NCBI RefSeq assembly: GCF_002113885.1
Contig: NW_018408904.1
Span: 498,034-562,033 of the forward strand
Length of the DNA stretch: 64,000 bases
Source of the DNA: Mizuhopecten yessoensis
Lineage: Eukaryota
Direction: 5' to 3'
Shown piece after piece: positions 2,927 to 54,000 of this stretch (position 1 is the stretch's first letter; every line of letters starts with the position of its first letter). Both the position numbers and the translations under genes were made by a program. The notes under the pieces are model-generated. The model saw only the letters and a program-made list of their open reading frames with translations. It ran no database searches and had not been told where the DNA came from.

Positions 2927-5900
2927 ATGCCAGAGACATTCAGCTTTGGTGTAGATCCAGTCACTACTCATGCTTGGAACAGGGATCGCTCGGGTAAGAA
3001 TACTTGTTAAGTCGCAATGAAATTATGTCTTTTAATTGTCATGTACCCATTCAAATGTTCTTAAAAATAATGTTCTAAGGGCAGTAAAGGATCAGTTTAT
3101 AATTGTTATACTTAAATTTTTCTGTTTCTACAGAATAGTCAAAGATTCAATTGTAATTTTACGACATAGTATGATAGTAAACATTGTTGGATACCAACAT
3201 TCGATTGTGCGACACTGACGATGGATGATGACTCCTACAGATCAGACAGTTTAGTTATAGGGGTAATAGATCCATGTTGTGAGCACCAACCCTGGGTATC
3301 TGACAATGGATGATGACTCCTACAGGTCAGACAGTTCAGTCTTAGGGGTAATATATCCATGTTGTGAACACTGATTCTGGGTATCTGACGATGGATGATG
3401 ACTCCTACAGGTCAGACAGTTCAGTTATAGGGGTAATATATCCATGTTGTGAGCACCAACCCTGGGTATCTGACAATGGATGATGACTTCTACAGGTCAG
3501 ACAGTTCAGTTATAGGAGTAATAGATCCATGTTGTGAACATAGCCATGTACATGTTTACAAGTATTTACAAATGTATTGTGTTTAAGTAAAAGGTCGTCT
3601 TTGAGAACTGGCTGCCAGGGTCAAAGATTAGTTGAAGATTGGAGTCTTAAAAGACTAATCCTCCTGAAATGGTTGTTAGTTTTTAACAGATTTGATGTAT
3701 AGTATCATCATGATGACAATTCCATGTTTTAATCTTTAAACAACTTCTAAATTAATGTACCCCTATAGTTTTATTTCCTAGATAAGACCATTGAGAATAC
3801 TGTAAGCTTAAGTGGTTGCCAAGGCTCCTTGCCCTCTTGTTATTGTTTTCGATATATTTGAATATTCCTTTTGTGATAGACAATTAAAATCAAATCAGTA
3901 GGAAAATTACATAGATTTTTCTTTTAGACAACTGAGTGAATTAATTGTGTTAAATACACCTATGAATAAAATCCGATATAACTTGTGAAGTAATTGGTTA
4001 ATACAAATCAAGCTTTAAGATTATTAGGTCTAGGGGTGTTTGGCTCCTATAGCTTGTTCCAGGATGTACCTAGACAGAGTTGGCTCCTATAGCTTGTTCC
4101 AGGATGTACCTAGACAGAGTTGGCTCCTATAGCTTGTTCCAGGATGTACCTAGTCAGAGTTGGCTCCAATAGCTTGTTCCAGGATGTACCTAGACAGTTG
4201 GCTCCTATAGCTTGTTCCAGGATGTACCTAGTCAGAGTTGGCTCCTATAGTTTGTTCCAGGATGTACCTAGACAGAGTTGGCTCCAATAGCTTGTTCCAG
4301 GATGTACCTATACAGAGTTGGCTCCTATAGCTTGGTACAGGATGTACCTAGTCAGAGTTGGCTCCAATAGCTTGTTCCAGGAGGTACCTAGACAGAGCTG
4401 GCTCCTAAAGCTTGTTCCAGGATGTTCCTAATCAGATTTGGCTCCTAAAGCTTTTCCAGGATGTACCTAGACAGAGGTGGCTCCTATAGCTTGTTCCAGG
4501 ATGTACCTAGACAGTTGGCTCCTATAGCTTGTTCCAGGATGTACCTAGTCAGAGCTGGCTCCTAAAGCTTGTTCCAGGATGTACCTAGACAGAGTTGGCT
4601 CCTATAGCTTGTTCCAGGATGTACCTAGACAGATGCATTATATAATTACACCTTGAACTAATGATTTTTCATCCTGTAATAGAGGTTGCTGTGTCCCTCA
4701 ATAATCATGAGGTGAAGGTATACAAGAAGACGGGCATCACTTACAATAACACTGCCACCCTGCAAGAACATGGTCAGCGAGTCACTAGTATCGACTGGGC
4801 ACAAAAAAGTAACAGCATAGTCACGTGTGGTGCTGTAAGTTCTATCTTAACGAATAATCCTATAAAACCTCACTACTGATGTTATTTGGAATAATCAAAA
4901 AGTTGGTTTAAGACTGAAAGAGATAATGATACCAAGGTCTGTTACAGTATACACTAGTAGCTATGGTACCATATCTGAATGCCATTTTTTATAAATAATT
5001 CTTTTTCCTGAAGAGCTAGATCGTGGCAATATATTTTCATTATTCATTTCTTAAATTGTCAGACTTACCTTTTTGTTACATTACCAAGTAAGGCCTTCAT
5101 TCTAATAAAAACTAATTTTGATATTCCAGGACAGGAATGCCTATGTTTGGACTCTCCAAGGTAATGGTCAATGGAAGCCAGTCCTTGTCATCTTAAGAAT
5201 CAACCGTGCTGCAACCTGTGTACGCTGGTCACCAGATGGTAAGAAACACCTTTTTCACTAAAACCTTCAAATTTGAATAATTGGCATTATTGTGACTTTG
5301 TTTTTCGAAATATTATTTCAGTCCACATATCAATAGGTCATTTAATTATCAGGACACCTAATATTACAGCTTAGAAATAAATATTTCTGTACAACACTTA
5401 AAACACGTTTCCATGAAAAATGTTCAGCTCATATGACTATTACTTGTTCCAGAGAACAAATTTGCAGTTGGGAGTGGTGCTCGTATCATCTCCATTTGCT
5501 ACTTCGAAGAAGAAAATAAGTGGTGGGTCAGTAAACACATCAAGAAGCCAATACGATCAACTGTTACATGGTAAGTAAACGATCAACTGTTACATGGTAA
5601 GCCAATATGATCACCTGTTACATGGTAAGCCAATAAGATCAACTGTTACATGGTAAGCCAATAAGATCAACTGTTACATGGTAGGCCAATACAATCAACT
5701 GTTACATGGTAAGCCAACACGATCAACTGTTACATGGTAATCAAACGATCAACTGTTACATGATAAGCCAATAAGATCAACTGTTACATGGTAAACCAAT
5801 AAGATCAACTGTTACATGATAAGCCAATACGATAAACTGTTACATGGTAAGCCAATAAGATCAACTGTTACATGGTAAGCCAACACGATCAACTGTTACA

Positions 5901-8900
5901 TGGTAAGCATAAGAAGAACAACTGTTACATGGTAAGCTAATAAGATCAACTGTTACATGGTAAGTAAACGATCAACTGTTACATGGTAAGCCAATAAGAT
6001 CAACTGTTACATGGTAAACCAATAAGATCAACTGTTACATGATAAGCCAATACGATAAACTGTTACATGGTAAGCCAATAAGATCAAATGTTACATGGTA
6101 AGCCAACACGATCAACTGTTACATGGTAAGCAAACGATCAACTGTTACATGATAAGCCAATAAGATCAACTGTTACATGGTAAACCAATAAGATCAACTG
6201 TTACATGGTAAGTCAACACGATCAACTGTTATATGGTAAGCAAACGATCAACTGTTACATGATAAGCCAATAAGATCAACTGTTACATGGTAAGCCAATA
6301 AGATCAACTGTTACATGGTAAGTCAATATGATCAACTGTTACATGGTAAGCCAATATGATCAACTGTTACATGGTAAGCCAATACGATCAACTGTTACAT
6401 GGTAAGCTAATGGAAACTTATGTAGTATAGTTAACTTTTCTACAGGCTTAGAAAATCCATCCACCCCTTCACCTATGTCCATGCCCAACTTGACATGAAA
6501 TCTTTATTTTCATCTGCCAGGCCTATTATCTCTGTCATCCAAATACATAAAAGTAACATAATATGTACAGATTTGTTTATTAAACATGACAATCAACATA
6601 CGTAATATTTCAGTATGAAGCCAATATTATGGTTGGTATCCATGTAATATTCTGGCAAGGACATTTGAACAATTACTAGGATGTATAAGTGAAGTCTAAT
6701 AGAATAAGCCTAATAGGGATGATTGGTAAGAAAATCTATAGAAGAATGCTCCTGAAAAGGGATGAAGGAATTTATCCTAATTTGGTATGGATCATCTCTA
6801 CAACAAATTCCACTTGTACTCCTGTTCAGTGATGCCAATTTTAACGGAAGATGGTGCAAATGATCATTGCCTAGCTATGTGCAAGTGATTTTTGCTTTTT
6901 TGAAATGATTCAAAATCCAGGACAGCTTCCCTATCCTCTGACTGGCAGAGACATTTTTAACCTTTTTTTCAAGTTTTTAATTTAAACGAGACAGCTTAAA
7001 ACATTCTCTACGTGTCTCGAGTATGTATTGTAAATTTTTGAGCTGTTTCAAAATGCAAGATAGTGGCCTGAACTTTGATTTTCTGAGAGATTTTGGAGTA
7101 ACAAGTCTGTCTAGATGCTATGCAATCTCAGTATAGCAGAATTAAAATAAAGTTGACAAACAACCAGGCATGACCCTGAGGAAACATTGAATAACAGTTT
7201 AGGGATACAGGCCCCTTGTGCCTTTTCACATTTGATGCGGAACTTCTCTCATTGTCAAGAGTACTGTAATTTTGTCTGCTATCTTTAGTACTGTGTAATG
7301 TTGTACTGGATTGTGTTTCAGCATTGACTGGCATCCAAACAACATTTTGTTGGCAGCAGGCTCCACTGACTTCAAGGCAAGGTAAGACCAATATATTACC
7401 AGATGTCATTTCATTTTCTCACATATCAATTATGTTAAAGCCCCACACTTCTGTTCATCGCCAAATTCCTTGTCTTGATGATAATTGAAGGTCTGTTAGC
7501 CTACATTTTTATTGATCATCATTGAAAAAAGGACCCTTAAGTTATTATTTTTCAGGAATTCATTGAAAGTTAGAAAGGATTAAAAATAGAAACAGATGCA
7601 TTTAATTTCTTTTCTGGATGATAATGCAAGTTCTGATTGCCTGATTGCTTTCGAAGTAAAACTTCATGTATGTGTTGGTTATCATTGAATAATAGCTACC
7701 TACATGTACCACTAGACTACCGTGCCTCCAACCTAGAACAGTTGAAATCCCCACTCGGTGACCACATACTGTATACTGGGTGAATTTAATGGCAGTGTTA
7801 TTTTAACGCTTTTCTTAGGAGGTTTCAATCCTTTGAAAATTTGTATATCTAAGCATTATTGTAAGGTCTACAATGTAGTTTAAAACTAAGGACAATAGGC
7901 AATAAGTCCCTGGGTCATAATATGGAAATAGTAGAGAGCTCCCATCCTGTATTATCCAATCGCTAGGCATGAAAAACAAGCACACATTATTTACCAAGAT
8001 AAGTCCAAGGTCGTACCCTGCCCTAGGTCTGAGGACCTCATTCTTTGGTCATAACATAGAAACAGTTGAGACTTCCACCTTAGCTATAACTGTCTATATA
8101 ATTTCTTAGCATGAAGAGATGACCACAATCATGAAATCAGGACTTGACCTGGGATCTGGGCCTGCCCCTGTGGATTTAGTCTCTGGGTCATAACATTTAT
8201 AAATTGCAAGAGACCCTTGAATAAATCTCATTTTCTTGAAGTTTCAATAATGTCCATTTTCTGAAATTTTGCTATGTCGTTGTTGCAGAGTTTTCTCAGG
8301 TTACATCAAGGACGTAGAACAGAAACCATCTGCCACTGCCTGGGGAGCCAAGATGACTCTCGGAAATCTCATGTGTGAATACTCCAACGGTGGAGGTAAG
8401 AATAGTTATCTGAGTACCCCAATGCTTAGCAACAATTTCCTCACAAGGAAGGTGTTGTAGATGTACTTTTCAAATAAATCACAATGATCAAAAATTGATA
8501 AATGTACACGTTTTTATGTTATGTTACTTCTTAATACTTACGGGAGATCTGGGTTGTTTTTAGTACCTTTAATGTTGTTATCTAAATCTCTTTCATATCT
8601 TTGTGCTTTTCACAGGTGGGTGGGTACATAATGTGTCCTTCTCCCCAAGTGGAGAGAAGCTGGCGTGGGTAGGACATGATGCTAGTGTGTCTGTCGCCAT
8701 GGCCGGTGGTGACAAGTAAGTATGACCTCAAAGTGTTTAAATACAAACTGAAAATAACTGATTGAAAACTTTGATTTTTTTTTTGTTATTAGTTACTCAC
8801 ATATGTCGATTGCTCCCACTTTTATTAAGATGAAGTTAAACGACGAAATCTTACCAAAATCATTAAAGTGGAAAATATAGGTTATAGTGATCTACATTTG

Positions 8901-21564: not shown

Positions 21565-21998
21565 TATACAATATGTACCTCATGTCTGATAAACAAGCTG
21601 TTCTATACAATATGTACCTCATGTCTGATAAACAAGCTGTTCTATACAATATGTACCTCATGTCTGATAAACAAGCTGTTCTATACAATATGTACCTCAT
21701 GTCTGATAAACAAGCTGTTCTATACAATATGTACCTCATGTCTGATAAACAAGCTGTTCTATACAATATGTACCTCATGTCTGATAAACAAGCTGTTCTA
21801 TACAATATGTACCTCATGTCTGATAAACAAGCTGTTCTATACAATATGTACCTCATGTCTGATAAACAAGCTGTTCTATACAATATGTACCTCATGTCTG
21901 ATAAACAAGCTGTTCTATACAATATGTACCTCATGTCTGATAAACAAGCTGTTCTATACAATATGTACCTCATGTCTGATAAACAAGCTGTTTTATAC
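21565..21998. repeat. 39-bp near-perfect minisatellite, 11 copies, ~0.8-1.2 kb downstream of the eEF2K stop
   Basis: Unit TATACAATATGTACCTCATGTCTGATAAACAAGCTGTTC; explains the ORFs 21503..22000 and 21513..22043. Confidence 0.97.
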
Positions 21999-22539
21999 AT
22001 TCAATATGCTGACTACCTGATCAGTATATCAAGTCCTAACTGATATTGGTGTATTATTTCATACTGTAGTCTTAATGCTAAAGACATCTAAATAAAAGAG
22101 TTTTCCTAATGAAATTCTTTATTAACATGTCGGTCTCAGAACTCAGTTAAAACAATACAAAACCAATAACTGAAAGGATTTATCAATGCTATCCTTGTAC
22201 ACAATGAATGGAACACCACCAATTAAACATACCAAAACCTTCACCAAAGATCTTTTCGTAGAAAATTGTTTTATCATACAACTAATTGACTTACATTAAG
22301 TAACCCTTCACAAATAACTCCACTGATTTAGTGATAGCAGCGTCTCTAATAATACACATGCTACTGTGTATAACAACCACAATGTTACATTGTGCATTCT
22401 GTTCTTCCTATGTTATCCATAGCTTACACATAAAACATTTCAAAACACAGTTACATAACTATACAGATAGACGAAACACTAGAAATCACTTTTCTATCAG
22501 AACTCTTCATGATTTGTTATGCTTAACATCTGTATCTGT

Positions 22540-22836
22540 TCCTTCCTCGGCCTCCGGTACACCTCCTCAGCCAGACTAGTGCCCCTCACTCTTCTTCCTG
22601 TTCAGCCAGACCAACCTTCCTCACTCCTCCTCCTCGACCTCCCCATAGGCCTCCTCTGCCAGACTAGTGCCCCTCACTCTTCTTCCTGTCCAGCCAGACC
22701 AACCTTCCTCACTCCTCCTCGACCTCCCCGTAGGCCTCCTCTGCCAGACTAGTGCCCCTCACTCTTCTTCCTGTCCAGCCAGACCAACCTTCCTCACTCC
22801 TCCTCCTCGACCTCCCCATAGGCCTCCTCTGCCAGA
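22540..22836 (-). repeat. 85-88-bp tandem repeat containing the last eEF2K codons, stop codon and proximal 3'UTR (3 copies plus a degenerate partial copy)
   Basis: Minus-strand unit TCTGGCAGAGGAGGCCTAYGGGGAGGTCGAGGAGGAG(GAG)TGAGGAAGG...CACTAG, boundaries at 22836, 22748, 22663 and 22575. Confidence 0.93.
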
Positions 22837-28300: not shown

Positions 28301-31300
28301 TAGTCATATTTGGTACCAGCATGCATTATGAATGCTTTACTGGTGGTAACCTTATTTTGTACCAGCATGCATTCTGAATGCTTTACATTAGGTTACCTTA
28401 TTTTGTTCCAGCATGCATTCTGAATGCTTTACATTAGGTAACCTTATTTTATACCAGCATGCATTATCAATGCTTTACTGCTGGTAGTCTTGTAAAGCTG
28501 GTAGTCTTGTTTAACTGGAAAAGGAACCAAGAACAAACATGATTTCACTCTAGGCTAGTCTGCTACTTTTCTTAAAGGAAAGTCAGTTGGTGATTGAGTA
28601 ATATCGTAATGTTTTTGACATAATGATAATGAGAACTTCAGCGTGATATAAAGGTACTGTACCTCTACTGTCATGGAGGATTGGCTGTCTGATTTGTCTG
28701 ATCTCTCCGATTCACTGATGAACCTCATGCGGCTGACCCTCACCCTCGGCGATGGACTGTCAATGGACATACCCTCATCAGTTTCCTCATCTATCGCTGA
28801 GTCACTCAGCACAGACGAGTTGGATCGCTGGCGCTCCAAGAAACGAGTAATATCAATCTTTGTGTCAGGAGATGAGAGAGAAATACAGCGTTCCTCGTCC
28901 CCTCTTAACCTTGTTTTCATCATCGACTTTCTCTGTAACAAGTCCAAGGTTATATAAAGTCATAAATTGTATATGGATGATTGCTAAAATTTCTCTTACA
29001 ATAAAACAATACCCTGTAATTATGTACAATTTCAAGTAAATTCTGATTGGTCACTTAAACAGAGGACTAATCAGATTTTTTTTTACTGAATTAGTCATGT
29101 CATTTGCCATTTTGATATGAAGAATTAAAGGCACAGTAGCCTAGTGGTAGGACGCCGGGCTCATGACTGAAGAGTTGCGGGTTCGAGTCACGTTATGGCA
29201 CTGTGTTGTATCTTTAAACCAGACACTTTACTTCGCTTGTTCCAGTCTACGCAGCTGTAAATGAGTATGTGGTTGGGCATTGCTAGAATTGTTGAATGCT
29301 AGCTGTGAGCGCTGAAATGGCAGTACCGGCTGTATGCTCCCCAGGGAGTTGACATATGAGATATTGGCTGGTTGCAAAAGCCCTATAACCACAGATAATA
29401 ATTTGTGAAGCGCTTTGAGACGACCTACAAATTAGGTTGTAATAAAGCAGTTTACAAGAACCTCAAATTATTATTATTACTGTTATTTTGTGAACTTCTG
29501 ACACACAATTGTCATGAAATGGTTGAGACACTTCAAATATTACAGGAAAAAGAAACTAAAAGAATGGTAACACAGAGAAGTACTTACCTGATTGCGGAGA
29601 ATGTCTTTGTGAGAGTCGAGTTCCGTGGGTGAGAGATCAAACTCAGTGAGATCAAGACTCCTGCAGATGTCATTACAGATGTGTGAGTGGAAGAAGAGGG
29701 CCATGCCCTTAGCCCCAAGGTTGCCATCCCCATACTCATTGCCCTCAATAGTGTGTATCTGAGGGTCAGTGTAAAGGTCACCGACTCCCTGTATGTCCAC
29801 AACGATCAGCATGTGACCAGATCGCTCAAACGTGAAGTGACTGAGGGCCTGTTAAATGATTCGAAGTATCCAGATATCAAGAATAAAGAATAAACAAGAG
29901 ATCCAAAGATCTCGACCACATAGCTTTTGTTTTTATAGACAAATATCATAACTTGGATTGATCTTTCTGCCGTAATGCAATTTTCAACACATGTGACAAT
30001 TGTGATCTTGAAAGTGTGCATAAATCATGCATTTGTAAAAAACAAACTCTGCAACCCAGCAAACTACAGAATATATATACCAAGGTACTAACTAAAGGCC
30101 TTATAATTCTATAGAATAACTTTTAACACATTTGACCTCTATCAGCCTTTAAAGTGGATAAAAAGTCATTCACTTTTAAGAACACTCGATAGCCTTCCAT
30201 TTCAGCAAGCTACATGACAAATATCCTTACTGGGTACTCTAAATAAGGCTCAAAGTATGTTTTAAAAACAAATTTAACACCAATAACAGCAATAAGCCTG
30301 AAAGTGGGTCAAGGTTATTTATTAGATAACAAATAAGTTCCACATATAAATGCACAATCTTTATCACATCAACCTACCTGTGGAGTGTAACGCAGGGAGT
30401 CATCCACAAACCCAGAGTTGGAGTTTCTTTATCACACATCAACCTACCTGTGGAGTGTAACGCAGGGAGTCATCCACAAACCCAGAGTTGGAGTTTCTTT
30501 ATCACACATCAACCTACCTGTGGAGTGTAACGCAGGGAGTCATCCACAAACCCAGAGTTGGAGTTTCTTTATCACACATCAACCTACCTGTGGAGTGTAA
30601 CGCAGGGAGTCATCCACAAACCCAGAGTTGGAGTTTCTTTATCACACATCAACCTACCTGTGGAGTGTAACGCAGGGAGTCATCCACAAACCCAGAGTTG
30701 GAGTTTCTTTATCACACATCAACCTACCTGTGGAGTGTAACGCAGGGAGTCATCCACAAACCCAGAGTTGGAGTTTCTTTATCACACATCAACCTACCTG
30801 TGGAGTGTAACGCAGGGAGTCATCCACAAACCCAGAGTTGGAGTTTCTTTATCACACATCAACCTACCTGTGGAGTGTAACGCAGGGAGTCATCCACAAA
30901 CCCAGAGTTGGAGTTTCTTTATCACACATCAACCTACCTGTGGAGTGTAACGCAGGGAGTCATCCACAAACCCAGAGTTGGAGTTTCTTTATCACACATC
31001 AACCTACCTGTGGAGTGTAACGCAGGGAGTCATCCACAAACCCAGAGTTGGAGTTTCTTTATCACACATCAACCTACCTGTGGAGTGTAACGCAGGGAGT
31101 CATCCACAAACCCAGAGTTGGAGTTTCTTTATCACACATCAACCTACCTGTGGAGTGTAACGCAGGGAGTCATCCACAAACCCAGAGTTGGAGTTTCTTT
31201 ATCACACATCAACCTACCTGTGGAGTGTAACGCAGGGAGTCATCCACAAACCCAGAGTTGGAGTTTCTTTATCACACATCAACCTACCTGTGGAGTGTAA

Positions 31301-34300
31301 CGCAGGGAGTCATCCACAAACCCAGAGTTGGAGTTTCTTTATCACACATCAACCTACCTGTGGAGTGTAACGCAGGGAGTCATCCACAAACCCAGAGTTG
31401 GAGTTTCTTTATCACACATCAACCTACCTGTGGAGTGTAACGCAGGGAGTCATCCACAAACCCAGAGTTGGAGTTTCTTTATCACACATCAACCTACCTG
31501 TGGAGTGTAACGCAGGGAGTCATCCACAAACCCAGAGTTGGAGTTTCTTTATCACACATCAACCTACCTGTGGAGTGTAACGCAGGGAGTCATCCACAAA
31601 CCCAGAGTTGGAGTTTCTTTATCACACATCAACCTACCTGTGGAGTGTAACGCAGGGAGTCATCCACAAACCCAGAGTTGGAGTTTCTTTATCACACATC
31701 AACCTACCTGTGGAGTGTAACGCAGGGAGTCATCCACAAACCCAGAGTTGGAGTTTCTTTATCACACATCAACCTACCTGTGGAGTGTAACGCAGGGAGT
31801 CATCCACAAACCCAGAGTTGGAGTTTCTTTATCACACATCAACCTACCTGTGGAGTGTAACGCAGGGAGTCATCCACAAACCCAGAGTTGGAGTTTCTTT
31901 ATCACACATCAACCTACCTGTGGAGTGTAACGCAGGGAGTCATCCACAAACCCAGAGTTGGAGTTTCTTTATCACACATCAACCTACCTGTGGAGTGTAA
32001 CGCAGGGAGTCATCCACAAACCCAGAGTTGGAGTTTCTTTATCACACATCAACCTACCTGTGGAGTGTAACGCAGGGAGTCATCCACAAACCCAGAGTTG
32101 GAGTTTCTTTATCACACATCAACCTACCTGTGGAGTGTAACGCAGGGAGTCATCCACAAACCCAGAGTTGGAGTTTCTTTATCACACATCAACCTACCTG
32201 TGGAGTGTAACGCAGGGAGTCATCCACAAACCCAGAGTTGGAGTTTCTTTATCACACATCAACCTACCTGTGGAGTGTAACGCAGGGAGTCATCCACAAA
32301 CCCAGAGTTGGAGTTTCTTTATCACACATCAACCTACCTGTGGAGTGTAACGCAGGGAGTCATCCACAAACCCAGAGTTGGAGTTTCTTTATCACACATC
32401 AACCTACCTGTGGAGTGTAACGCAGGGAGTCATCCACAAACCCAGAGTTGGAGTTTCTTTATCACACATCAACCTACCTGTGGAGTGTAACGCAGGGAGT
32501 CATCCACAAACCCAGAGTTGGAGTTTCTTTATCACACATCAACCTACCTGTGGAGTGTAACGCAGGGAGTCATCCACAAACCCAGAGTTGGAGTTTCTTT
32601 ATCACACATCAACCTACCTGTGGAGTGTAACGCAGGGAGTCATCCACAAACCCAGAGTTGGAGTTTCTTTATCACACATCAACCTACCTGTGGAGTGTAA
32701 CGCAGGGAGTCATCCACAAACCCAGAGTTGGAGTTTCTTTATCACACATCAACCTACCTGTGGAGTGTAACGCAGGGAGTCATCCACAAACCCAGAGTTG
32801 GAGTTTCTTTATCACACATCAACCTACCTGTGGAGTGTAACGCAGGGAGTCATCCACAAACCCAGAGTTGGAGTTTCTTTATCACACATCAACCTACCTG
32901 TGGAGTGTAACGCAGGGAGTCATCCACAAACCCAGAGTTGGAGTTTCTTTATCACACATCAACCTACCTGTGGAGTGTAACGCAGGGAGTCATCCACAAA
33001 CCCAGAGTTGGAGTTTCTTTATCACACATCAACCTACCTGTGGAGTGTAACGCAGGGAGTCATCCACAAACCCAGAGTTGGAGTTTCTTTATCACACATC
33101 AACCTACCTGTGGAGTGTAACGCAGGGAGTCATCCACAAACCCAGAGTTGGAGTTTCTTTATCACACATCAACCTACCTGTGGAGTGTAACGCAGGGAGT
33201 CATCCACAAACCCAGAGTTGGAGTTTCTTTATCACACATCAACCTACCTGTGGAGTGTAACGCAGGGAGTCATCCACAAACCCAGAGTTGGAGTTTCTTT
33301 ATCACACATCAACCTACCTGTGGAGTGTAACGCAGGGAGTCATCCACAAACCCAGAGTTGGAGTTTCTTTATCACACATCAACCTACCTGTGGAGTGTAA
33401 CGCAGGGAGTCATCCACAAACCCAGAGTTGGAGTTTCTTTATCACACATCAACCTACCTGTGGAGTGTAACGCAGGGAGTCATCCACAAACCCAGAGTTG
33501 GAGTTTCTTTATCACACATCAACCTACCTGTGGAGTGTAACGCAGGGAGTCATCCACAAACCCAGAGTTGGAGTTTCTTTATCACACATCAACCTACCTG
33601 TGGAGTGTAACGCAGGGAGTCATCCACAAACCCAGAGTTGGAGTTTCTTTATCACACATCAACCTACCTGTGGAGTGTAACGCAGGGAGTCATCCACAAA
33701 CCCAGAGTTGGAGTTTCTTTATCACACATCAACCTACCTGTGGAGTGTAACGCAGGGAGTCATCCACAAACCCAGAGTTGGAGTTTCTTTATCACACATC
33801 AACCTACCTGTGGAGTGTAACGCAGGGAGTCATCCACAAACCCAGAGTTGGAGTTTCTTTATCACACATCAACCTACCTGTGGAGTGTAACGCAGGGAGT
33901 CATCCACAAACCCAGAGTTGGAGTTTCTTTATCACACATCAACCTACCTGTGGAGTGTAACGCAGGGAGTCATCCACAAACCCAGAGTTGGAGTTTCTTT
34001 ATCACACATCAACCTACCTGTGGAGTGTAACGCAGGGAGTCATCCACAAACCCAGAGTTGGAGTTTCTTTATCACACATCAACCTACCTGTGGAGTGTAA
34101 CGCAGGGAGTCATCCACAAACCCAGAGTTGGAGTTTCTTTATCACACATCAACCTACCTGTGGAGTGTAACGCAGGGAGTCATCCACAAACCCAGAGTTG
34201 GAGTTTCTTTATCACACATCAACCTACCTGTGGAGTGTAACGCAGGGAGTCATCCACAAACCCAGAGTTGGAGTTTCTTTATCACACATCAACCTACCTG

Positions 34301-37300
34301 TGGAGTGTAACGCAGGGAGTCATCCACAAACCCAGAGTTGGAGTTTCTTTATCACACATCAACCTACCTGTGGAGTGTAACGCAGGGAGTCATCCACAAA
34401 CCCAGAGTTGGAGTTTCTTTATCACACATCAACCTACCTGTGGAGTGTAACGCAGGGAGTCATCCACAAACCCAGAGTTGGAGTTTCTTTATCACACATC
34501 AACCTACCTGTGGAGTGTAACGCAGGGAGTCATCCACAAACCCAGAGTTGGAGTTTCTTTATCACACATCAACCTACCTGTGGAGTGTAACGCAGGGAGT
34601 CATCCACAAACCCAGAGTTGGAGTTTCTTTATCACACATCAACCTACCTGTGGAGTGTAACGCAGGGAGTCATCCACAAACCCAGAGTTGGAGTTTCTTT
34701 ATCACACATCAACCTACCTGTGGAGTGTAACGCAGGGAGTCATCCACAAACCCAGAGTTGGAGTTTCTTTATCACACATCAACCTACCTGTGGAGTGTAA
34801 CGCAGGGAGTCATCCACAAACCCAGAGTTGGAGTTTCTTTATCACACATCAACCTACCTGTGGAGTGTAACGCAGGGAGTCGTCCACAAACCCAGAGTTG
34901 GAGTTTCTTTATCACACATCAACCTACCTGTGGAGTGTAACGCAGGGAGTCGTCCACAAACCCAGAGTTGGAGTTGTACTTGACATAATGACCTTCAATG
35001 AAGTGCTCAAGGTGATACAAGGGAGAACCTGGTCTGTCCCTAAATTCTAAGATGTACATCTGGAATATGTCCACCTGGATAAAACAATGGTAACATAGGT
35101 CAATCAACATCAGACAGGTCCTTTTTTATAATGCACATATACAGGTAGTGTACATGTGACAGAAACGCTAGGATGGCTGAAGATTAAAGGGGAATAACTA
35201 TATATATTCAGATGTCAAATTTTAGACCCAAATTCAACATATAACATTCATCTTCCCAACCTTTATAAGTAAAAAAAGTTTGGTAAATACAAGTGTAAAA
35301 GCAAAGAAGCTAGGCTCCAGACAAACTCAAGTAAAACATTTAACAAAAGGTCAAAGCTCTATCAAAAATACATGTAAAATTCTGCAATGCCAACTTATGT
35401 AGCAATTTTCACCATCATATGTGTTTTAGTAAAAGCAGGCGAGGGATTAAGGGCACAGTTAATGGACAAATGGACAGATACCATAGGGTATATCACGATA
35501 TGATCCATCACCAAGGGGCATGTAGAAAGGTATATCAACATATTTTTTTTGTATCAATTAGCAGAAGCAAAATAGTCCAACTATTGTGGTTGTACTGTAG
35601 TACATACTGCAATGTAAGGTACCTTTTTTGGAGGTCTGTGTCTGTTGTACTCCTCTGCCCAAACCTTGGCATCCATCTGAAGTTTGACATCCTGGAAATA
35701 CACATCTCTGTCAACTGTCTGTATGTAGTGTTTGGCCACATAATTTCCACTGTGATTCCAGTCCGGGTTCTTCAAGAAATGAGACAGTTTCTTCCTGAAA
35801 TAGATCACATGTATATGATATATGTAATAAATCTGGGTGCATGTACACTTTACAAGATACAGATATCACTATGAAAAAGTTTTTATTTGTAATGGAACTG
35901 GACTGGGTCGATCATTGGCAATCAGATAGCTCAATTGGTCATCGATCTAGAGTTTGGAGGGTCCCGAGTTTGAAGCCCAGTCAGGCAGTTGCTTTTCTCT
36001 TTCTCCTGTTACAAAATTGGAAAGTTTGCCAACCCTTGATTCAAGTATTGGGTGTACGCTCGGCAAGGGGATAGCCAAATCTAGGTTGTAAATAGTGATG
36101 TCTTCAGGGGCGAAGACTTAGAAAATAGAGGGAGGAACGTAACGAAAACTGCACTGGGTCGATCGTCGGCGACCAGGTGGCTCAATTGGTAGAGCGTTCA
36201 TCTAGAGTTTGGTGGGTCCTGAATTTGAATCCCAGTCTGGCCCTACATTTCTCTTTCTCCTGTTAAACAGTTTTCAATCCTCATCTCAAAACAATTACTG
36301 CTATACATGTAGTTGGAAGTTTACGATAAAAATAATATCTTTATTTTCAACATACAAATGTATGTCCAATACAAAGAAAAAGGGGTTGCGACAGGACAAT
36401 TGGGGAGTGGAACTTGACTCCAATGACTTCCGTATTGCAAAACTTTGGTATACACACACAAGACACCAAGGGTATGATGATGAGTACTTCAAATCAAGTG
36501 ATCCTACAATTCTTGTTTTACTCAGAAAAATGTAACAAACTCAAACATTTCGTTGTTTTTTCCCCCCTATATAAACATACAGCAGACACTCATCAATTCC
36601 GTTATATTACAGACAGATTAAGTTGGTTTGATCAGAGATTTGTTTGTGTTTTTATCAATTCTAAACAGACAGTAAAGAGTTAGTCATACATAAACAAGAG
36701 CGATTATATCTATATTACTCCTGACCCTTCAATTTCATAAATTAATCCAAATTTACACAATCAAAAACTTAATTAAGATGTTTACAAAACTTTAACTTTA
36801 TGACAAATACTACAGGATTGAATTTAGAAAAAGAAATTTAATACAATTACATTATCTGTAAAGTAGGGGCCAGATACTATACACATGCATTTATAAGCTA
36901 CATGACCTATATTTAGAGACTTAAAACATGAAATCAATATGCTTGCAACTTTCAGATTACCATATTTATACAAGGTCTAAACCATCTCACATATGTCATC
37001 CTATGTCACATGTTGCACAAGTTATGATTCACACAAATTCCTCATTTTCTGATAAATAGTAAAGCAGGATTTTCTACCAACAGGGCAGTTAAAGTGATTT
37101 TACCATAAAGACAAAAACGTAATCATTATACTTCATCTATATGTTAGTCTGTCTTACTGGTTTAAAAACATCATATGACAAAGAAACAAAACATCAAGTC
37201 TCCCTAGCATGATTGACTGTCCCTCACATAATTGAATATCCCTCACAAGATCAATTTACCCTTCCGAGTATCTATCTCATGGCCTCTTTTGTAGATCTCT

Positions 37301-40300: not shown

Positions 40301-43300
40301 GACTTAATCTTTCAATGATGTTTATTTTTAACTAAAATTAATTTAACGTTTTGTTTAGAGTTTTATGTTGGTTAAGCCATGCTATCAAATGACCCGGTTT
40401 ATTGATGGTAGAGGCATGCAAACTCGGCCAAACTGTGTGTGTGTACTCCATACATGCAGTAACAATGATTACTGTACTTCAGCCATACGACAGCGAGTCA
40501 GATTGGATTGTATTGATCACATGATGGGGAAAACATTATGTTTCTTTCTCAAGCTCAATTTTTCCACAAATCAGCAGGCAGTACTACACCCCAGTGCACA
40601 GAGACTAAATCATGGACAACATCGATAAAGCTTGATACTCCACTGTTGTTCTATTTTGGTAAATTAAAAAAAAGATGCACTTGACATAGAAAAACAATAC
40701 TCTTTGTTCTTTGTTTCCCAGAGATTTGTCATGTTTAAAAGGACAGAAAATGTCTTACTGAAAGGCTTTTTATTTGACAGTACATCTTTGTAACTGTGAC
40801 AAAAAAGGCCTGTATTATTTCTAGTTTTGTTATCATAACTAAAACAGAAGCAGACTTAACAAAAGGAAGCACATTGTAGCAATAACCAGACCTCAATGTT
40901 AACAAAACATCTGCACTTGTCCCCTATCATTATCAACCCACTCTTCAGATGTGTGTAAACATTACCCCATTACCTACATATATACTGCTGATGCTTACCC
41001 CTAATATATCACAATTACAGACAGACAACATAGTCTGTAATTTATCTACAGGTGCTGACAATGTCTGCACTCTTACTAACACACTGTTACCACATGCGGT
41101 CGTACAGTGTGCAGTTTCTGTCCTAAAACTATTACTGTTGACTGATAGAGCCTGTACTAGGTACACAGCCCTGGCACACACACATAGAGTCCCACATGTC
41201 TATGTGCCTCTTGTTGTACACATTCACCTAGATATGTGACCTCAGAGGGATAGTAAACAGCCTGCTTACCTCATGGCTACACACAGACAGTAAACACCTA
41301 GACTTTCAGGTCATGTTCAACAGAAAGGAAAAAAGAAATACAAAATCTTCCAAACAATTTTATTTATACAGGTACATTGTAAAAGAGAGTATTTTTTCAC
41401 ATGATGGGCAGATATGTGCTCAGGCTGTATCTGGACAGTTAGCATAAAATGTTATATGGTCTGGTCAACATAAACATTTTTTTTCGCTTTGTAGGCAAAG
41501 CCATTCCCCCAGAAACAATAGATTCTGACATTAGACATCACACACAATTATTTTAATGATAAATTCTATCATTTAAATGTCACACTGAAATTCACAGCAA
41601 TGAAAGATACTGATATTTACCCAGTACACAGGAATCCTAGAGTAATACTAACTTGTATTCATTTATCATAATCTGGGATTCTTTGTGACTAGTCAATGCA
41701 AAAATATTTTGAGTTCAGTTGCCAGTCATTCGTTTTGTATATTAATTATTTTTGTATATTAATTATTTTTGTAAGAAAAACATGCTTTAATTCAATAATA
41801 TTATCTGGGCAGGTGATTTTTGAATGCAGACAAGTACATTCAAGAAGGTTACTTGCCTGGCAGACAAGTACCTAAAATCCCCACCCACCCTCTTACATAT
41901 TGAACAACCATTTTTTCCTGGAAAGAATATAATCACTAAATGTAGAAATGTTGCTTTAACAACATATAACTAGTATCAAATTATTTGCAAATTATGCAAA
42001 CTTCCATATAGATTTGGATCTCAACTTATTACAAAACTTCAAATAGAAATTCACACACAGGATCTTGTGAACCGATAAAAAGCCTTAAGAAACATTATGA
42101 TGTAACTAGCACTGTGACATTCAAAAAGACTTATAAATCACAGCTGTCATACGAGGCAAATTATGTTATACAGACTAAATCTTAATGATTAGCATATTTT
42201 TCACTATTAACTCTGACACAGTTTATAAAGCTACAGTCGAGCTAGCCTATAAAAAGCCAGTCTAGCACAGAAGTGCTCAGCTCTTGTTCAATTAATGTTA
42301 CCTCGCTAAACAGACTTCCTCCCCTGACTGAGCAGGAGATGCTATCAGAGACACACACACAGGGACGCCAGGGCCCTACCACCGTGTCAGACACCCACAC
42401 AGGGACACCAGGGCCCTACCACCGTGTCAGACACACACCCAGGGATGCCAGGGCCCTACTATCGAGTCAGACACACACACAGGCACGCCAGGCCCCTACT
42501 ACCGTGTCAGACAAACACACAGGGACGCCAGTGCCCTACTATCGTGTCACACACACACACAGGGACGGCAGGGCCCTACTATCGGGTAAGACACACACAC
42601 AGGGACACCTGGGCCCTACTATCGTGTAAGACACACACACAGGGATGCCAGGGCCCTACGATCGTGTCAGACACACACTCAGGGGCGCCAGGGCCCTACT
42701 ATAGTGTCAGACACACACACAAGGATCCCAGGGCCCTACCATCGGGTCAGACACACACAGGGATGCCAGCGCCCTACTATCGTGTCAATCACACACACAG
42801 GGACGCCGGGGCCCTACTATCGTGTCAACTAGCCTATAAAAAGCCAGTCTAGCACAGAAGTGCTCAGCTCTTGTTCAATTAATGTTACCTCGTTAAACAG
42901 ACTTCCTCCCCTGACTGAGCGGGAGATGCTATCAGAGACACACACCCAGGGATGCCAGGGCCCTACTATTGTGTCAGACACACACAGGGACGCCGGGGCC
43001 CTACCATCGTGTCGGACACACACACAGGCACGCCAGGCCCCTACTATCGTGTCAATCACACACACAGGGACGCCCGGGCCCTACTACCGTGTCAGATACA
43101 CACACAGGGACGCCGGGGCCCTACCATCGTGTCAGACACACATACAGGGACGCGAGGGCCCTACCATCGTGTCATACACACACACAGGGCCGCCAGGGCC
43201 CTACTATGGTGTCAGACACACACACACGGACACCAGGGCCCTACCACCGTGTCAGACACCCACACAGGGACGCCAGGGACCTACTATCGTGTCAGACACC

Positions 43301-46300
43301 CACACAGGGACGCCAGGGACCTACTATCGTGTCAGACCCACACACAGGGACGCCAGTGCCCTACTATCGTGGCAGACACACATACAGGGACGCGAGGGCC
43401 CTACTATCGTGACAGACACACACAGGGACGCCCGGGCCCTACTATCGTGTCAACTAGCCTATAAAAAGCCAGTCTAGCACAGAAGTGCTCAGCTCTTGTT
43501 CAATTAATGTTACCTCGCTAAACAGACTTCCTCCCCTGACTGAGCAGGAGATGCTATCAGAGACACACACCCAGGGATGCCAGGGCCCTACGATCGTGTC
43601 AGACACACACACAGGCACGCCAGGCCCCTACTATCGTGTCAACTAGCCTATAAAAAGCCAGTCTAGCACAGAAGTGCTCAGCTCTTGTTCAATTAATGGT
43701 ACCTCGCTAAACAGACTTCCTCCCCTGACTGAGCAGGAGATGCTATCAGAGACACACCCACAGGGACGCCAGGGCCGTACTATCGTGTCAGACACCCACA
43801 CAGGGACACCAGGGCCCTGCTATCGTGTCAGACACACCCACAGGGACGCCAGGGCCCTACTCCCGTGTCAGACACACACCCAGGGATGCCAGGGCCCTAC
43901 TATAGTGTCAGACACACACACAAGGATCCCAGGGCCCTACCATCGTGTCATACACACACACAGGGACACCAGGGCCCTACCATCGTTTCAAACACACACA
44001 CAGGGACATCAGGGCCCTACCATCGTGTCAAACACACACACAGGGACACCAGGACCCTACTATCGGGTCAGACACAAACACAGGGACGCCAGGGCGCTAC
44101 TATCGTGTCAGACTCACACACAGGGACGCCAGTGCCCTACTATCGTGGCAGACACACATACAGGGACGCGAGGGCCCTACTATCGTGTCACACACACACA
44201 CAGGGACGACAGGGCCCTACTATCGTGTCAATATTTAGGTTAATAATCCTTCACATTTTCACAAATAACCATCCCAACAGCTGAGGATTGATCATACATG
44301 ATCATAAATTCTTTACAACATATTGCAGATATGAAGTCATCTATTGGATAAACAGGCATGCTATGAGGAGAATATATTACTGTATTACCCGTTTGTATTA
44401 AAAAAAACAAGGAACAGTCAGTCAGCATTAAAAACATAACATTTTGCCTGTTTATTACCTTGTTTACTAGTAAATAGAAATTTTGATGACTTTGGTTGGT
44501 AAGTTGGTAATTAAACCTAAGCCTCATGCACACACTATTTTGTTATACGACATGACTTAGTGATCACTTTTAACGTGGCCTGCATCTGTGCACCATGTAC
44601 ACGTATGTACATTAGGCCATACTTAGATGATAGTGCTCACCTATTGAAAATGATCCGTGTCAAACCGTTACTTAATGACATCACTAATTCTGACAATACT
44701 TTATAAACTAAAACGTAGTTAATTACCTCTCAGTACATCATTTGTATCATTAATTCTGACAAGTCAATTACTATATAAACTTAAATAACGTAACATAATT
44801 TGCTATCAGAATTCTACTCCTTTTCTTTTGTACTAGGCAAATAAACTTCAAACAAATGCATTCTTGCATTCTGTTCAAATATTAAATCAATTTTTATCAT
44901 CACTAAAAAACAACTACACAAAACAAAGAAAATATTACATCAGTTTGGTATTGGACAATTCCAGATACATTTTGTATGCTTACAAGAATAAATACACAGA
45001 TTTTTTATGCTTACAAGAATAAATACACAGATTTTTATTAAGTAAGTATTTATAACTTATAATTCATAATTTGTATCTAATAACTAAATTGGTACCACTT
45101 CTTCTATAGTTCTGTCAGTGTTTAAAGATGTACTTCCTCATTTTATTTCAATTTACCTTAAAGGTAGAAATAAATCCCGCTATTTTTCTACTTAAAAGAC
45201 CTTGAAAATTTATATTCGTGTTGAATGTATGTTATTTCGTCTATATGTATTTTTTTTAATACAAAGACAGTCTATCACTGTTGACAAGGTAGCTCTTAAA
45301 GTTAGAGTGACAGTACTGGTATATTGATTGGAGATTCAGTAGTGATGGGCAATTGGTTTAAAATCATAATCGATAATCAGTTTGTAATCGGAAGTAGTAA
45401 ACCGATTGATGATCTATTGCATAATCAGTTCATAATTTTATGGGACTGAATACCCAAATTAAGTGACAACACTGCTACCTATAGACAGAGTTGTAACTAT
45501 ACTACACTAGGCTTCGTTCTTTTGTAATGAATGAATTTCATTTCAATACATTTTTTACATTGAAAACATTAACACTTTGACTACAAGTTCAATGAAGAAC
45601 CAATTATATCAATAATAGAATTTGTAATCGATAATCGGAATGGTCAAACCAATTGATTTTCGATTTGATCGATCATCAGCCCATCACTAAGGTGATCGAT
45701 CATCAGCCCATCACTGAGGTGATCTGTCATCAGCCCATCACTAAGGTGATCGAACATCAGCCCATCCCTAAGGTGATCGATCATCAGCCCTTCACTAAGG
45801 TGATCGATCCTCAGCCCATCCCTAAGGTGATCGATCATCAGCCCATCTCTACGGTGATCAATCATCAGCCCATCACTAAGGGGATCGATCATCAGCCCAT
45901 CACGAAGGTGATCGATCATCAGCCCATCTCTACGGTGATCGATCATCAGCCCATCTCTACGGTGATCGATCATCAGCCCATCACGAAGGTGATCGATCAT
46001 CAGCCCAGCACTAAGGTGATCGATCATCAGCCCAGCACTAAGGTGATCGATCATCAGACCATCACTAAGGTGATCGATCTTCAACCTATCACTAAGGTGA
46101 TCGATCTTCAGCCCATCACTAAGGTGTTCTATCATCAGCCCATCACTAAGGAGATCGATCATCAGCCCATCACGAAGGTGATCGATCATCAGCCCATCTC
46201 TACGGTGATCGATCATCAGCCCATCTCTACGGTGATCGATCATCAGCCCATCGCTAAGGGGATCGATCATCAGCCCATCACCAAGGTGATCGATCATCAG

Positions 46301-52545: not shown

Positions 52546-54000
52546 TGGCAAGTCTCTATTTACAGCATTTCTTTTATAAAAGTTTGCTTAATGGCTTATA
52601 GACATTATATGCCAATTTATTTATTTTCATTTTTTATTAAAGACCTGTCCTTTTATATATTTTTCATTATGTTACCAGGTCATTGGTCTGGCCTATTATT
52701 TTTGCAGAAGATGTTTAAAAAATTTAACACTCTTGTGATCTTAATTGTAGGTAAAGGTCATCTAGTAGCGGTGGTTTTAGGCCAGGTACATACTGGCGGC
52801 CAGGTACATACTGGCCATGTATCACCACTCAGGACCTCCTGGTTATTCAGAAGAAGTGGAATAAAAGGTTTTTACATATTTGACTCCTGTGACCTTGAAA
52901 GTAGGTCAAGGTTATTTATTTGAAGAAACTTTATAGGACTCTGTCCAAGATACCAACTAGCCAAATATCATGGCCCTAGGTCCTCCAGTTCTTAAGAAGA
53001 TATCATTCATAGAAAAAAATAATGGAAGACGGAAAACACACATGATAAGCTGAACTGGCACAAAAATTTAACCTTTGACCTTACCTGATTATTATATGTA
53101 AAAACACTCGGACTTTCTAAAGCATATCAGAGTATCACAACTCTAGACCTTACAAATATATATATTTTGACACCAGCCAATGTTCAAAGTTGACCTCAAC
53201 ATGATATGCTACATATTTGTAAAACTGATTTACAAAAAAAAAACTATTGTACTTCTATCTTTCTTTTAAGAAGAAATTTTACAAAATCAACATGAATATT
53301 GAACAAATACTGTAAAATATAGAGAACAAGAGCTGTAGTAGAATAGCATAGCTCGTCTATTGCCAACACTTGTGAATCTAATAAGCCATCATCACTTGTT
53401 GTGTTATTTGGGTTTTTTTAAACCTATGTCAGTAACTTTTTTTTTATGGTTTTGGGCCTTTGCTGTGCCTTACAGAGTATATTGATGCTAGTGTTTGTCT
53501 TTACATGTCAAAATAATTTAAAATGAACTTACTATTTAATTTGTTCACTTTCATAATAAGTCTCTTTCTTTCTTTTTGTTGTTGTTGACATATTTGATCC
53601 CAATGACCCCACCCCCTCTGGCCCGGCTCCTGCATGGGGGTTATATCAAAAATCAGAAAGTGTTGTGCACTTTTTGATACATATATGTACCATGTGTAAA
53701 AGTTTCAAGTTCCTACCTCAAACATTGTAGAAAAAGTTAACCCCTTAAGTACCCCCCCCCCCCCCCCCCCACCCCCATCATCATTTGCTAAAATGAATTG
53801 CTGTAAAATGTAGAACTCGATCATTATAATGTTTGATTTGATATGCTATTAAGACTGAATTTGTTTTGAAAATATTTGACCCCATCCCTCTGGCCCGCCC
53901 CCTGGGGGGTCATGTTCAAAATCCAAAAGTGTTGTGCACTTCTCCATACATATATGTTCCATGTCTAAAAGTTCCTNTCGGCCTCTAGGGGTTATGTCAA

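What the first reader, a model, noticed from the sequence alone, without database searches (positions are those of the whole stretch)
30358..34975. eEF2K intron built from 65 tandem 70-nt mini-introns: a chain of CAG|GT candidate recursive splice points
Seen: the exon ends in TCCCTGCGTTACACTCCACAG (pyrimidine-rich, CAG), so duplication across the donor makes each unit read GTAGGT...ATGAC...YnCAG|GTAGGT. That is a donor, a branch-like site at -23, and an acceptor abutting the next donor with a zero-length exon. The one substitution I see separating the 64 distal copies from the exon copy and its neighbour is GACGAC to GATGAC, which creates the U of a UnA branch-point core; it is also a CpG transition, so it may be neutral. 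Knowledge: AG|GT ratchet points mediate recursive splicing, and tandem duplication of an AGGT site is a proposed intron-gain route. Inference: splicing from the true donor to any internal CAG regenerates the same exon|donor junction, so the 4.6-kb array could be removed stepwise and tolerated at any length. Retaining even one unit adds GTA GGT TGA and truncates the kinase domain, which could act as a dosage control on a translation-elongation regulator.
Basis: partly seen in the sequence, partly recalled or inferred. Interest (0 to 1): 0.85.

Follow-up and report, generated by a model that had tools for sequence, protein, structure and literature searches.

The report
Splice-donor minisatellite in scallop eEF2K intron
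In the Yesso scallop's only eEF2K gene, an intron opens with 66 near-identical 70-bp copies of the preceding exon's end plus its splice donor. This is a large new example of a repeat type already known from amphioxus and human genes, and stepwise splicing of it is possible on paper but untested.

Summary
**Observation: confirmed.** Window 30358-34975 (gene on the minus strand) holds 66 tandem 70-bp units.
- Each unit is the last 47-48 nt of an alpha-kinase exon plus the first 22-23 nt of its intron.
- Every unit carries CAG|GTAGGT, and copies 3-65 are identical.
- The gene is eEF2K of Mizuhopecten yessoensis and is single-copy. NCBI's protein models join the first donor (34928) to 29848.

**What it is.** A boundary-spanning minisatellite, the kind called "mirages" in amphioxus. 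Human F7, IFI6, CBS, LMNB2 and PDGF have the same kind, and where tested only the most upstream donor(s) reach the mRNA.
- This scan has already followed up the same kind of array on other DNA of this genome.
- Pecten maximus has no array at this donor.
- Ylistrum balloti has an independent 21-bp x 21 donor array at the same donor. Its units are far too short to be introns, so such arrays persist without mini-intron competence.

**The recursive-splicing idea.** It holds at sequence level. The donor is strong, the pyrimidine tract is as good as the gene's real acceptors, a branch-like A sits at -23, and GTA GGT TGA follows the exon in frame. It has no RNA evidence, and it fails the long-intron and conservation criteria of known ratchet points. 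"Dosage control" is unsupported.

**Limits.** Copy number, perfect homogeneity and splicing intermediates are therefore unverified.

The parts
34928..35074 (-). eEF2K alpha-kinase exon (49 codons, phase 0 at both ends). Its last 47-48 nt are the exonic part of the repeat unit.
   Evidence: Translation. Pfam Alpha_kinase profile 73-123, E 2.5e-09. 100% match to NCBI M. yessoensis eEF2K-like proteins P0163/P0164. Splice bounds.
34919..34930 (-). Authentic (first) donor CAG|GTAGGT followed by the in-frame TGA (34921-34919).
   Evidence: NCBI models read ...RYTPQ|ALSHF..., i.e. 34928 joined to 29848.
30358..34975 (-). 70-bp x 66 tandem array (a boundary-spanning minisatellite). The 65 internal CAG|GTAGGT points have their last 'exon' base at 34858 down to 30378 in steps of 70.
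   Evidence: TRF, unit-by-unit comparison. The unit is found nowhere else in the genome.
34882..34952 (-). The two C-type positions (34952 in the exon copy, 34882 in copy 2). Copies 3-66 have T at the equivalent site (34812 and onwards). The change is synonymous, GAC to GAT, at a CpG.
29849..30357 (-). Unique 3' part of the intron, ending in the true acceptor AG (29850-29849). The pyrimidine tract is weak (Y = 0.50).
29588..29848 (-). Next eEF2K exon (Alpha_kinase profile 124-185). It is single-copy in the genome.

Best explanation
This is a lineage-specific minisatellite whose first monomer spans an exon-intron boundary, the type called a 'mirage' or splice-donor minisatellite.

**Origin (inferred).** A roughly 70-bp segment covering the end of an eEF2K kinase-domain exon and the start of its ancient intron was duplicated in tandem. 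One variant unit (T-type, with GTGTG) then expanded and homogenised, by unequal exchange or replication slippage. The array edges stayed slightly different.

**Processing.** The mRNA is made by joining the first donor (34928) to the acceptor at 29848. This is shown only at the level of NCBI's protein models and domain continuity. The 65 downstream donors are intronic pseudo-sites. They either stay silent, as in the human analogues, or splice among themselves with no visible consequence. Both of these are inferred.

**Function.** The array is best read as tolerated neutral DNA in a genome whose introns are full of minisatellites, not as a regulatory device.
For: - Array anatomy and edge variants.
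- Gene identity, and the first-donor junction in P0163/P0164.
- The intron position is shared with other animals: genomic ORFs P0002 and P0005 end in ...Q|AFSHF.
- The exon is single-copy in the genome, so the gene must be spliced correctly.
- The orthologous Pecten maximus donor...CACAG|GTAGGT, has no array.
- Ylistrum balloti has an independent 21-bp x 21 array at the same donor, and its protein P0180 still reads ...RYTPQ|ALSHF.
- Minisatellites are very dense here: 43 TRF rows in the window, and 28 distinct arrays in the three orthologous genes. Only the two donor-anchored arrays carry a strong sense-strand donor. That is 7%, about the exon share of the gene.
- Published precedent: F7, IFI6, CBS, LMNB2 and PDGF boundary minisatellites use only the most upstream donor(s) (PMC1557585). 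Amphioxus 'mirages' do not disturb splicing (PMC3087553, PMC3902484).
Against: - I obtained no RNA reads or transcript contigs of this species. First-donor use therefore rests on NCBI's models, and these could be homology-driven.
- The internal acceptor-like sites are as pyrimidine-rich as the gene's real acceptors and much closer to the donors, so complete silence is not guaranteed.
- Sixty-three identical interior copies is unusual. Arrays of 20 or more copies in this window and in the two other scallop loci are 72-96% identical. This may reflect very recent expansion, or an assembly that flattened or mis-sized the array.
Confidence: 0.7

Rival explanations
1. Recursive (stepwise) splicing. 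The internal CAG|GTAGGT points act as acceptor-plus-donor ratchet points, so the 4.6-kb array is removed in several steps. Each step regenerates the exon|donor junction, which makes array length invisible to the mRNA.
For: - Sequence competence: donor 8/9 to consensus, acceptor pyrimidine fraction 0.70, branch-like UGAC with its A at -23, no AG in between, and 47 nt from donor to that A.
- The next unit's donor, 70 nt downstream, could define the cryptic 'RS-exon' that ratchet points need (PMC8605326).
- The unit RNA is not structured in a way that would hide the sites (z = +1.46).
- Mature-mRNA assays on the human analogues could not have detected such steps.
Against: - No RNA evidence.
- The intron is 5 kb, whereas known ratchet points lie in very long introns and are ultraconserved.
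- The array is missing in Pecten maximus.
- The ratchet-point donor and the 'RS-exon' donor are identical here, so the usual competitive advantage of the ratchet-point donor is absent.
- 70 nt is near the lower size limit for an intron (my own knowledge). The eight introns of this gene whose bounds I resolved are 344-5079 nt.
- Donor arrays with 21-nt, 12-nt and 37-nt units, which cannot be mini-introns, are tolerated just as well.
Confidence: 0.2
2. Assembly artefact in size or homogeneity. A real but shorter or more variable donor array was expanded or flattened during assembly or gap closing, so '66 identical copies' does not describe real DNA. In the extreme case there is no array at all.
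For: - Sixty-three identical interior units are an outlier. Other arrays of 20 or more copies are 72-91% identical in this window and 84-96% in the P. maximus and Y. balloti loci.
- The genome is a fragmented draft: 82,659 contigs, and a lone N at 53977.
- From memory, not verified here, this assembly is short-read based.
- A published amphioxus mirage was mis-assembled in its draft genome (PMC3087553).
Against: - The entry is specific: two C-type copies come before the T-type run.
- The exit is specific: a 2-nt-shorter last copy runs into unique intron.
- There is no N in or next to the array.
- Arrays of 99-100% identity, with up to 9 copies, also occur in the two other scallop assemblies.
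- Other large donor arrays have been reported by this scan in the same genome (unchecked notes).
Confidence: 0.25
3. Dosage control. Occasional use of a downstream donor retains 70-nt units that carry a premature stop, and this tunes eEF2K output through nonsense-mediated decay.
For: Only the reading frame supports it: GTA GGT TGA follows the exon, and 70 is not a multiple of 3.
Against: - No transcript evidence.
- Related scallops lack this array or have a different one, so no conserved function is indicated.
- Every donor-spanning duplication of a phase-0 exon with a nearby intronic stop has the same property.
Confidence: 0.05

Closest known systems
Human minisatellites whose first monomer spans an exon-intron boundary: F7 IVS7 (37 bp x 5-9), IFI6/6-16 (authentic donor plus 25 pseudo-sites), CBS IVS13 (15-20 repeats), LMNB2 (100 bp x 10-15), PDGF intron 4 (81 bp x 16-18). 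Source: Borensztajn et al. 2006, PMC1557585.
   Same: The first monomer contains the real exon end and donor, and the donor is reiterated identically down the intron. The mRNA is made from the most upstream donor(s). The LMNB2 and PDGF units (100 and 81 bp) are similar in size to the 70-bp unit here.
   Different: There are more copies here (66), and the interior copies are perfectly identical. The unit includes 47-48 nt of exon, which happens to give a pyrimidine-rich CAG in front of each donor. Splicing has not been examined experimentally. The organism is a mollusc.
Amphioxus 'mirages': minisatellite-like tandem duplications of exon-intron boundaries in Adh3, globins, TnC and PGBD5. Cañestro et al. 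2002, as cited in PMC3087553 and PMC3902484.
   Same: Tandem repeats span an exon-intron boundary, many units carry AG/GT, regular splicing is not disturbed, and the array edges are excluded from homogenisation.
   Different: The published mirages have few copies (for example 3-6 units in BflGb6). They include acceptor-side cases and were shown to vary in length. Here there is one assembled allele and no population data.
Recursive splice sites (ratchet points) of Drosophila and vertebrates: Hatton 1998, Duff 2015 and Sibley 2015, as reviewed in Joseph et al. 2021, PMC8605326.
   Same: A juxtaposed acceptor|donor motif (YnCAG|GTAGGT here), with a downstream donor that could define a short cryptic exon.
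   Different: Known ratchet points are single, ultraconserved sites in very long introns, and their donor is stronger than the cryptic exon's donor. Here there are 65 identical, lineage-specific sites in a 5-kb intron, and no intermediates have been seen.
Intron creation by tandem duplication of an AGGT-containing segment: Rogers 1989, Zhuo et al. 2007 and Gao & Lynch 2009, as cited in PMC3087553.
   Same: The same raw material: tandem duplication that reiterates an AG|GT.
   Different: No new intron interrupts coding sequence here. The duplicates sit inside an intron that already existed in other animals.

Membership tests
Boundary-spanning (splice-donor) minisatellite / 'mirage' | Tandem array whose first monomer contains the real exon end and the exon-intron junction | tested here: met
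   The array starts 48 nt inside exon 35074-34928 and runs into the intron.
Boundary-spanning (splice-donor) minisatellite / 'mirage' | The authentic donor sequence is reiterated in the following monomers | tested here: met
   66 identical CAG|GTAGGT sites at 70-nt spacing.
Boundary-spanning (splice-donor) minisatellite / 'mirage' | Mature mRNA uses the most upstream donor(s) and regular splicing is not disturbed | tested here: inconclusive
   NCBI protein models P0163/P0164 and Pfam domain continuity fit 34928 joined to 29848. No reads or transcript contigs could be obtained.
Boundary-spanning (splice-donor) minisatellite / 'mirage' | Copy-number polymorphism or instability | not testable with these tools
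Recursive splice site (ratchet point) | [quoted passage not shown] | tested here: met
   Met at sequence level only: pyrimidine fraction 0.70, branch-like A at -23, CAG|GTAGGT.
Recursive splice site (ratchet point) | Downstream donor that defines a short cryptic RS-exon, with the ratchet-point donor stronger than it | tested here: not met
   A donor does lie 70 nt downstream, but it is identical in sequence, so there is no strength advantage (criterion from PMC8605326).
Recursive splice site (ratchet point) | Location in a very long intron and evolutionary conservation of the site | tested here: not met
   The intron is 5079 nt. The array is absent from Pecten maximus and replaced by an unrelated 21-bp array in Ylistrum balloti.
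Recursive splice site (ratchet point) | Splicing intermediates (sawtooth read density, lariats, junction reads into the site) | not testable with these tools
In-array junctions are also identical in sequence to unspliced array, except at the C/C/T edge.
Intron gain by tandem duplication of an AGGT segment | A new intron whose two boundaries derive from the duplicated copies interrupts formerly continuous exon sequence | tested here: not met
   The intron position pre-exists in other scallops and other animals. The annotated mRNA keeps none of the duplicated exon pieces.
eEF2K (alpha-kinase family) | Alpha_kinase catalytic domain and full-length similarity to eEF2K orthologues | tested here: met
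   PF02816 on both exons. 100% identity to NCBI 'eukaryotic elongation factor 2 kinase-like' of Mizuhopecten yessoensis, and 84-88% identity between the Tegillarca query (P0001, residues 180-360) and the other mollusc eEF2Ks found, M. yessoensis included.

The most novel reading that the evidence does not exclude
The 65 internal CAG|GTAGGT points are really used. The spliceosome removes the array in several steps, donor to any downstream in-array acceptor, each step regenerating the same junction. Such donor minisatellites would then be self-healing and could grow to any length without changing the mRNA. That would make boundary minisatellites a natural, copy-number-variable model of zero-length-exon recursive splicing outside flies and vertebrates.
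Probability: 0.2. Interest if true: 0.6.

Novelty: new member of a known kind. Interest (0 to 1): 0.35.

Why it matters
As it stands, this adds a large mollusc example (66 copies, in an essential, single-copy translation-control kinase gene) to a known class of repeats.

It has two uses.
- It is a natural competition experiment: 66 identical strong donors face one weak acceptor, so it can test how a mollusc spliceosome picks the first donor.
- The same donor carries independent arrays in two scallop genera. That raises the question of whether splice donors are preferred seeding points for minisatellites, or merely the places where such duplications are tolerated.

If in-array splicing were shown, it would link minisatellite growth to recursive splicing.

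Tried and rejected
**Searches that gave nothing.**
No read-level DNA or RNA evidence exists in this report.
- The look-up of encoding contigs found nothing for the genomic ORF over the exon or for NCBI protein P0164.
- The search for homologous proteins with P0164:205-350 found no transcript fragments of this species.
- The original scallop genome paper, Zhuo 2007 and Cañestro 2002 are not held. The sequencing technology of this assembly therefore stays unverified, and those papers are cited only through PMC3087553.

**Ideas rejected.**
- RNA structure hiding the sites: the fold is no better than shuffles.
- A second eEF2K copy that would free this one to decay: the exon is single-copy.
- A dispersed repeat family: the unit occurs only in this array.
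- Special enrichment of donor-bearing arrays within these three orthologous genes: 2 of 28 arrays, about the exon share of the gene.

**Joined sequences.** Searches used single exons by reference, or database proteins by id. One joined piece of the 3' end was translated inside a script only, to compare it with P0163.
Full report
**The observation**

Tandem Repeats Finder reports a single array at 30358-34975 with period 70, 66.0 copies, 99% matches and no indels. The gene lies on the minus strand. Read that way, every unit is the last 47-48 nt of an exon, ending in a pyrimidine-rich stretch and CAG, followed by the first 22-23 nt of the intron, starting GTAGGT.

A unit-by-unit comparison finds 66 CAG|GTAGGT sites exactly 70 nt apart, with the last exon base at 34928, 34858 ... 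30378.
- Copies 3-65 are identical.
- Copies 1 and 2 have C (34952, 34882) where all later copies have T.
- Copy 66 leaves the array into unique intron and lacks one GT of a GTGTG run.

The array unit occurs nowhere else in the 988-Mb assembly. There is no N in or beside the array; the only N of the window is at 53977.

**The gene**

- The exon is 35074-34928 (49 codons, phase 0) and the next exon starts at 29848, so the intron is 34927-29849, or 5079 nt.
- The two exons hit Pfam Alpha_kinase at profile positions 73-123 and 124-185, contiguous across the junction.
- NCBI's 'eukaryotic elongation factor 2 kinase-like' isoforms X1 and X2 of Mizuhopecten yessoensis (P0164, P0163) match the window's exons and read ...DDSLRYTPQ|ALSHFTFERSGH.... 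That is the first donor joined to 29848.
- The gene runs from about 48663 to about 22833. Its exon 5 is single-copy in the genome.
- Genomic ORFs from other animals end in ...Q|AFSHF at the same place, so the intron position is old.

**Relatives**

In Pecten maximus (P0179, locus L009) the exon ends ...CACTCCACAG|GTAGGTGG and runs straight into unique intron. Its 3.1-kb intron holds only an unrelated 50-bp x 29 minisatellite. The 70-bp array is therefore specific to the Mizuhopecten lineage.

In Ylistrum balloti (P0180, locus L010) the same donor is followed by an independent array of 21-bp units, ACAG|GTAGGTGAAGACTAATT. It has 21.3 copies at 88% identity and starts 4 nt inside the exon. Its protein still reads ...RYTPQ|ALSHF.

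A 21-nt unit cannot be an intron. Donor arrays at this very site therefore persist without any unit-by-unit splicing competence.

**Background load of repeats**

The window gives 43 TRF rows. In the three orthologous eEF2K genes I count 28 distinct arrays of at least 3 copies and period at least 15. Only the two donor-anchored arrays carry a strong sense-strand 5' splice site. That is 7%, close to the roughly 8% of the gene that is exon. This small sample needs no special donor-seeding mechanism.

The second, independent hit on the same donor has a chance of about 3% per species, by my rough estimate from array density. I only flag this.

**What is known**

Borensztajn et al. [quoted passage not shown]
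- F7 IVS7: 37 bp x 5-9 repeats.
- IFI6/6-16: the authentic donor followed by 25 pseudo-sites.
- CBS: 15-20 repeats.
- LMNB2: 100 bp x 10-15 repeats.
- PDGF: 81 bp x 16-18 repeats.

In these genes only the authentic donor, or the first two or three, reaches the mRNA. They showed with 50 F7 constructs that the most upstream site is selected by a 5'-to-3' process.

In amphioxus the same structures are called 'mirages'. They carry AG/GT, do not disturb splicing, vary in length, and keep their edge units out of homogenisation (PMC3087553, PMC3902484).

Earlier follow-ups of this scan describe several more such arrays elsewhere in this genome. I took from them the organism name, which I confirmed, and the 'mirage' lead, which I checked in the papers.

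**The recursive-splicing idea**

At sequence level it holds.
- The unit's donor matches 8 of 9 consensus positions, the second best in the gene.
- The 20 nt before each internal CAG are 70% pyrimidine. The gene's eight real acceptors range from 50 to 80%, and this intron's true acceptor is 50%.
- UGAC puts an A at -23 with no AG downstream of it.
- The donor-to-A distance is 47 nt.

The unit RNA is not structured (z = +1.46). The logic that any in-array splice regenerates the exon|donor junction is correct.

It does not fit known ratchet points. Those are single, ultraconserved sites in very long introns, and their donor outcompetes the donor of a short cryptic exon (PMC8605326). Here the intron is 5 kb, the sites are lineage-specific, and the competing donors are identical.

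Nothing shows use of the internal sites. In-array junctions are identical in sequence to unspliced array except at the C/C/T edge, so only lariat, nascent-RNA or edge-spanning reads could show it.

The C-to-T change is a synonymous CpG transition (GAC to GAT). The relatives have GAA and GAG at that codon, so it gives no signal of selection.

No new intron was gained. 'Dosage control' has no support beyond the reading frame.

**Caveat on the assembly**

Sixty-three identical interior copies are an outlier. Other arrays of 20 or more copies are 72-91% identical in this window and 84-96% in the two other scallop loci. Arrays at 99-100% identity there have at most 9 copies.

The genome is a fragmented draft of 82,659 contigs. 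From memory I believe it is short-read based, but I could not confirm this.

The specific entry (two C-type copies) and exit (the shorter last copy) argue that an array is really there.

**Verdict**

The thing is a large new member of a known kind.

Noticed in passing
L010:13928-14371 (Ylistrum balloti eEF2K): The orthologous donor carries an independent 21-bp x 21.3 array. The unit is ACAG|GTAGGTGAAGACTAATT at 88% identity, starting 4 nt inside the exon. Pecten maximus has AATTACAG 18-25 nt into the same intron, which suggests slippage between two ACAG motifs seeded the Ylistrum array.
   Followed up: partly
window 22562-22836 (minus strand): An 88-bp x 3.2 array duplicates the last codons and stop of eEF2K (...AYGEVEEEE*) into the 3' UTR. 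NCBI isoform X2 (P0163, ending EVEEE) equals removal of exactly one unit, 22811-22724, and that is the only GT..AG placement. It may be an in-array splice or a copy-number allele read as an intron; I cannot tell which.
   Followed up: partly
L009:22378-22866 (Pecten maximus eEF2K): A 38-bp x 13 intronic array in which every unit reads TTATACAG|GTAATAC, an acceptor-like then donor-like motif. It ends about 25 nt before a real acceptor and is not obviously derived from the neighbouring exon.
   Followed up: no
window 5545-6411 and 21565-21999: Two further arrays whose units contain donor-like motifs. One is 28 bp x 31 with ACATG|GTAAGC on the plus strand. The other is 39 bp x 11 at 99% identity with GAG|GTACAT on the minus strand. 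Whether their first copies are real exon ends was not checked. A first-reader note on this window claims so.
   Followed up: no
window 42349-44230: A GC-rich (0.54) 40-bp x 48 degenerate array (73% matches) with a 189-bp higher-order period, inside the 12-kb intron after the first coding exon of eEF2K.
   Followed up: no
window 48232-35802: About 10 residues of P0164 (aa 145-154) are not placed by tblastn between the first coding exon and the exon at 35802-35623. A micro-exon probably lies in this 12-kb interval.
   Followed up: no
window 53977: A single N, the only one in the window, inside a repeat-rich stretch. It was left as it is.
   Followed up: no
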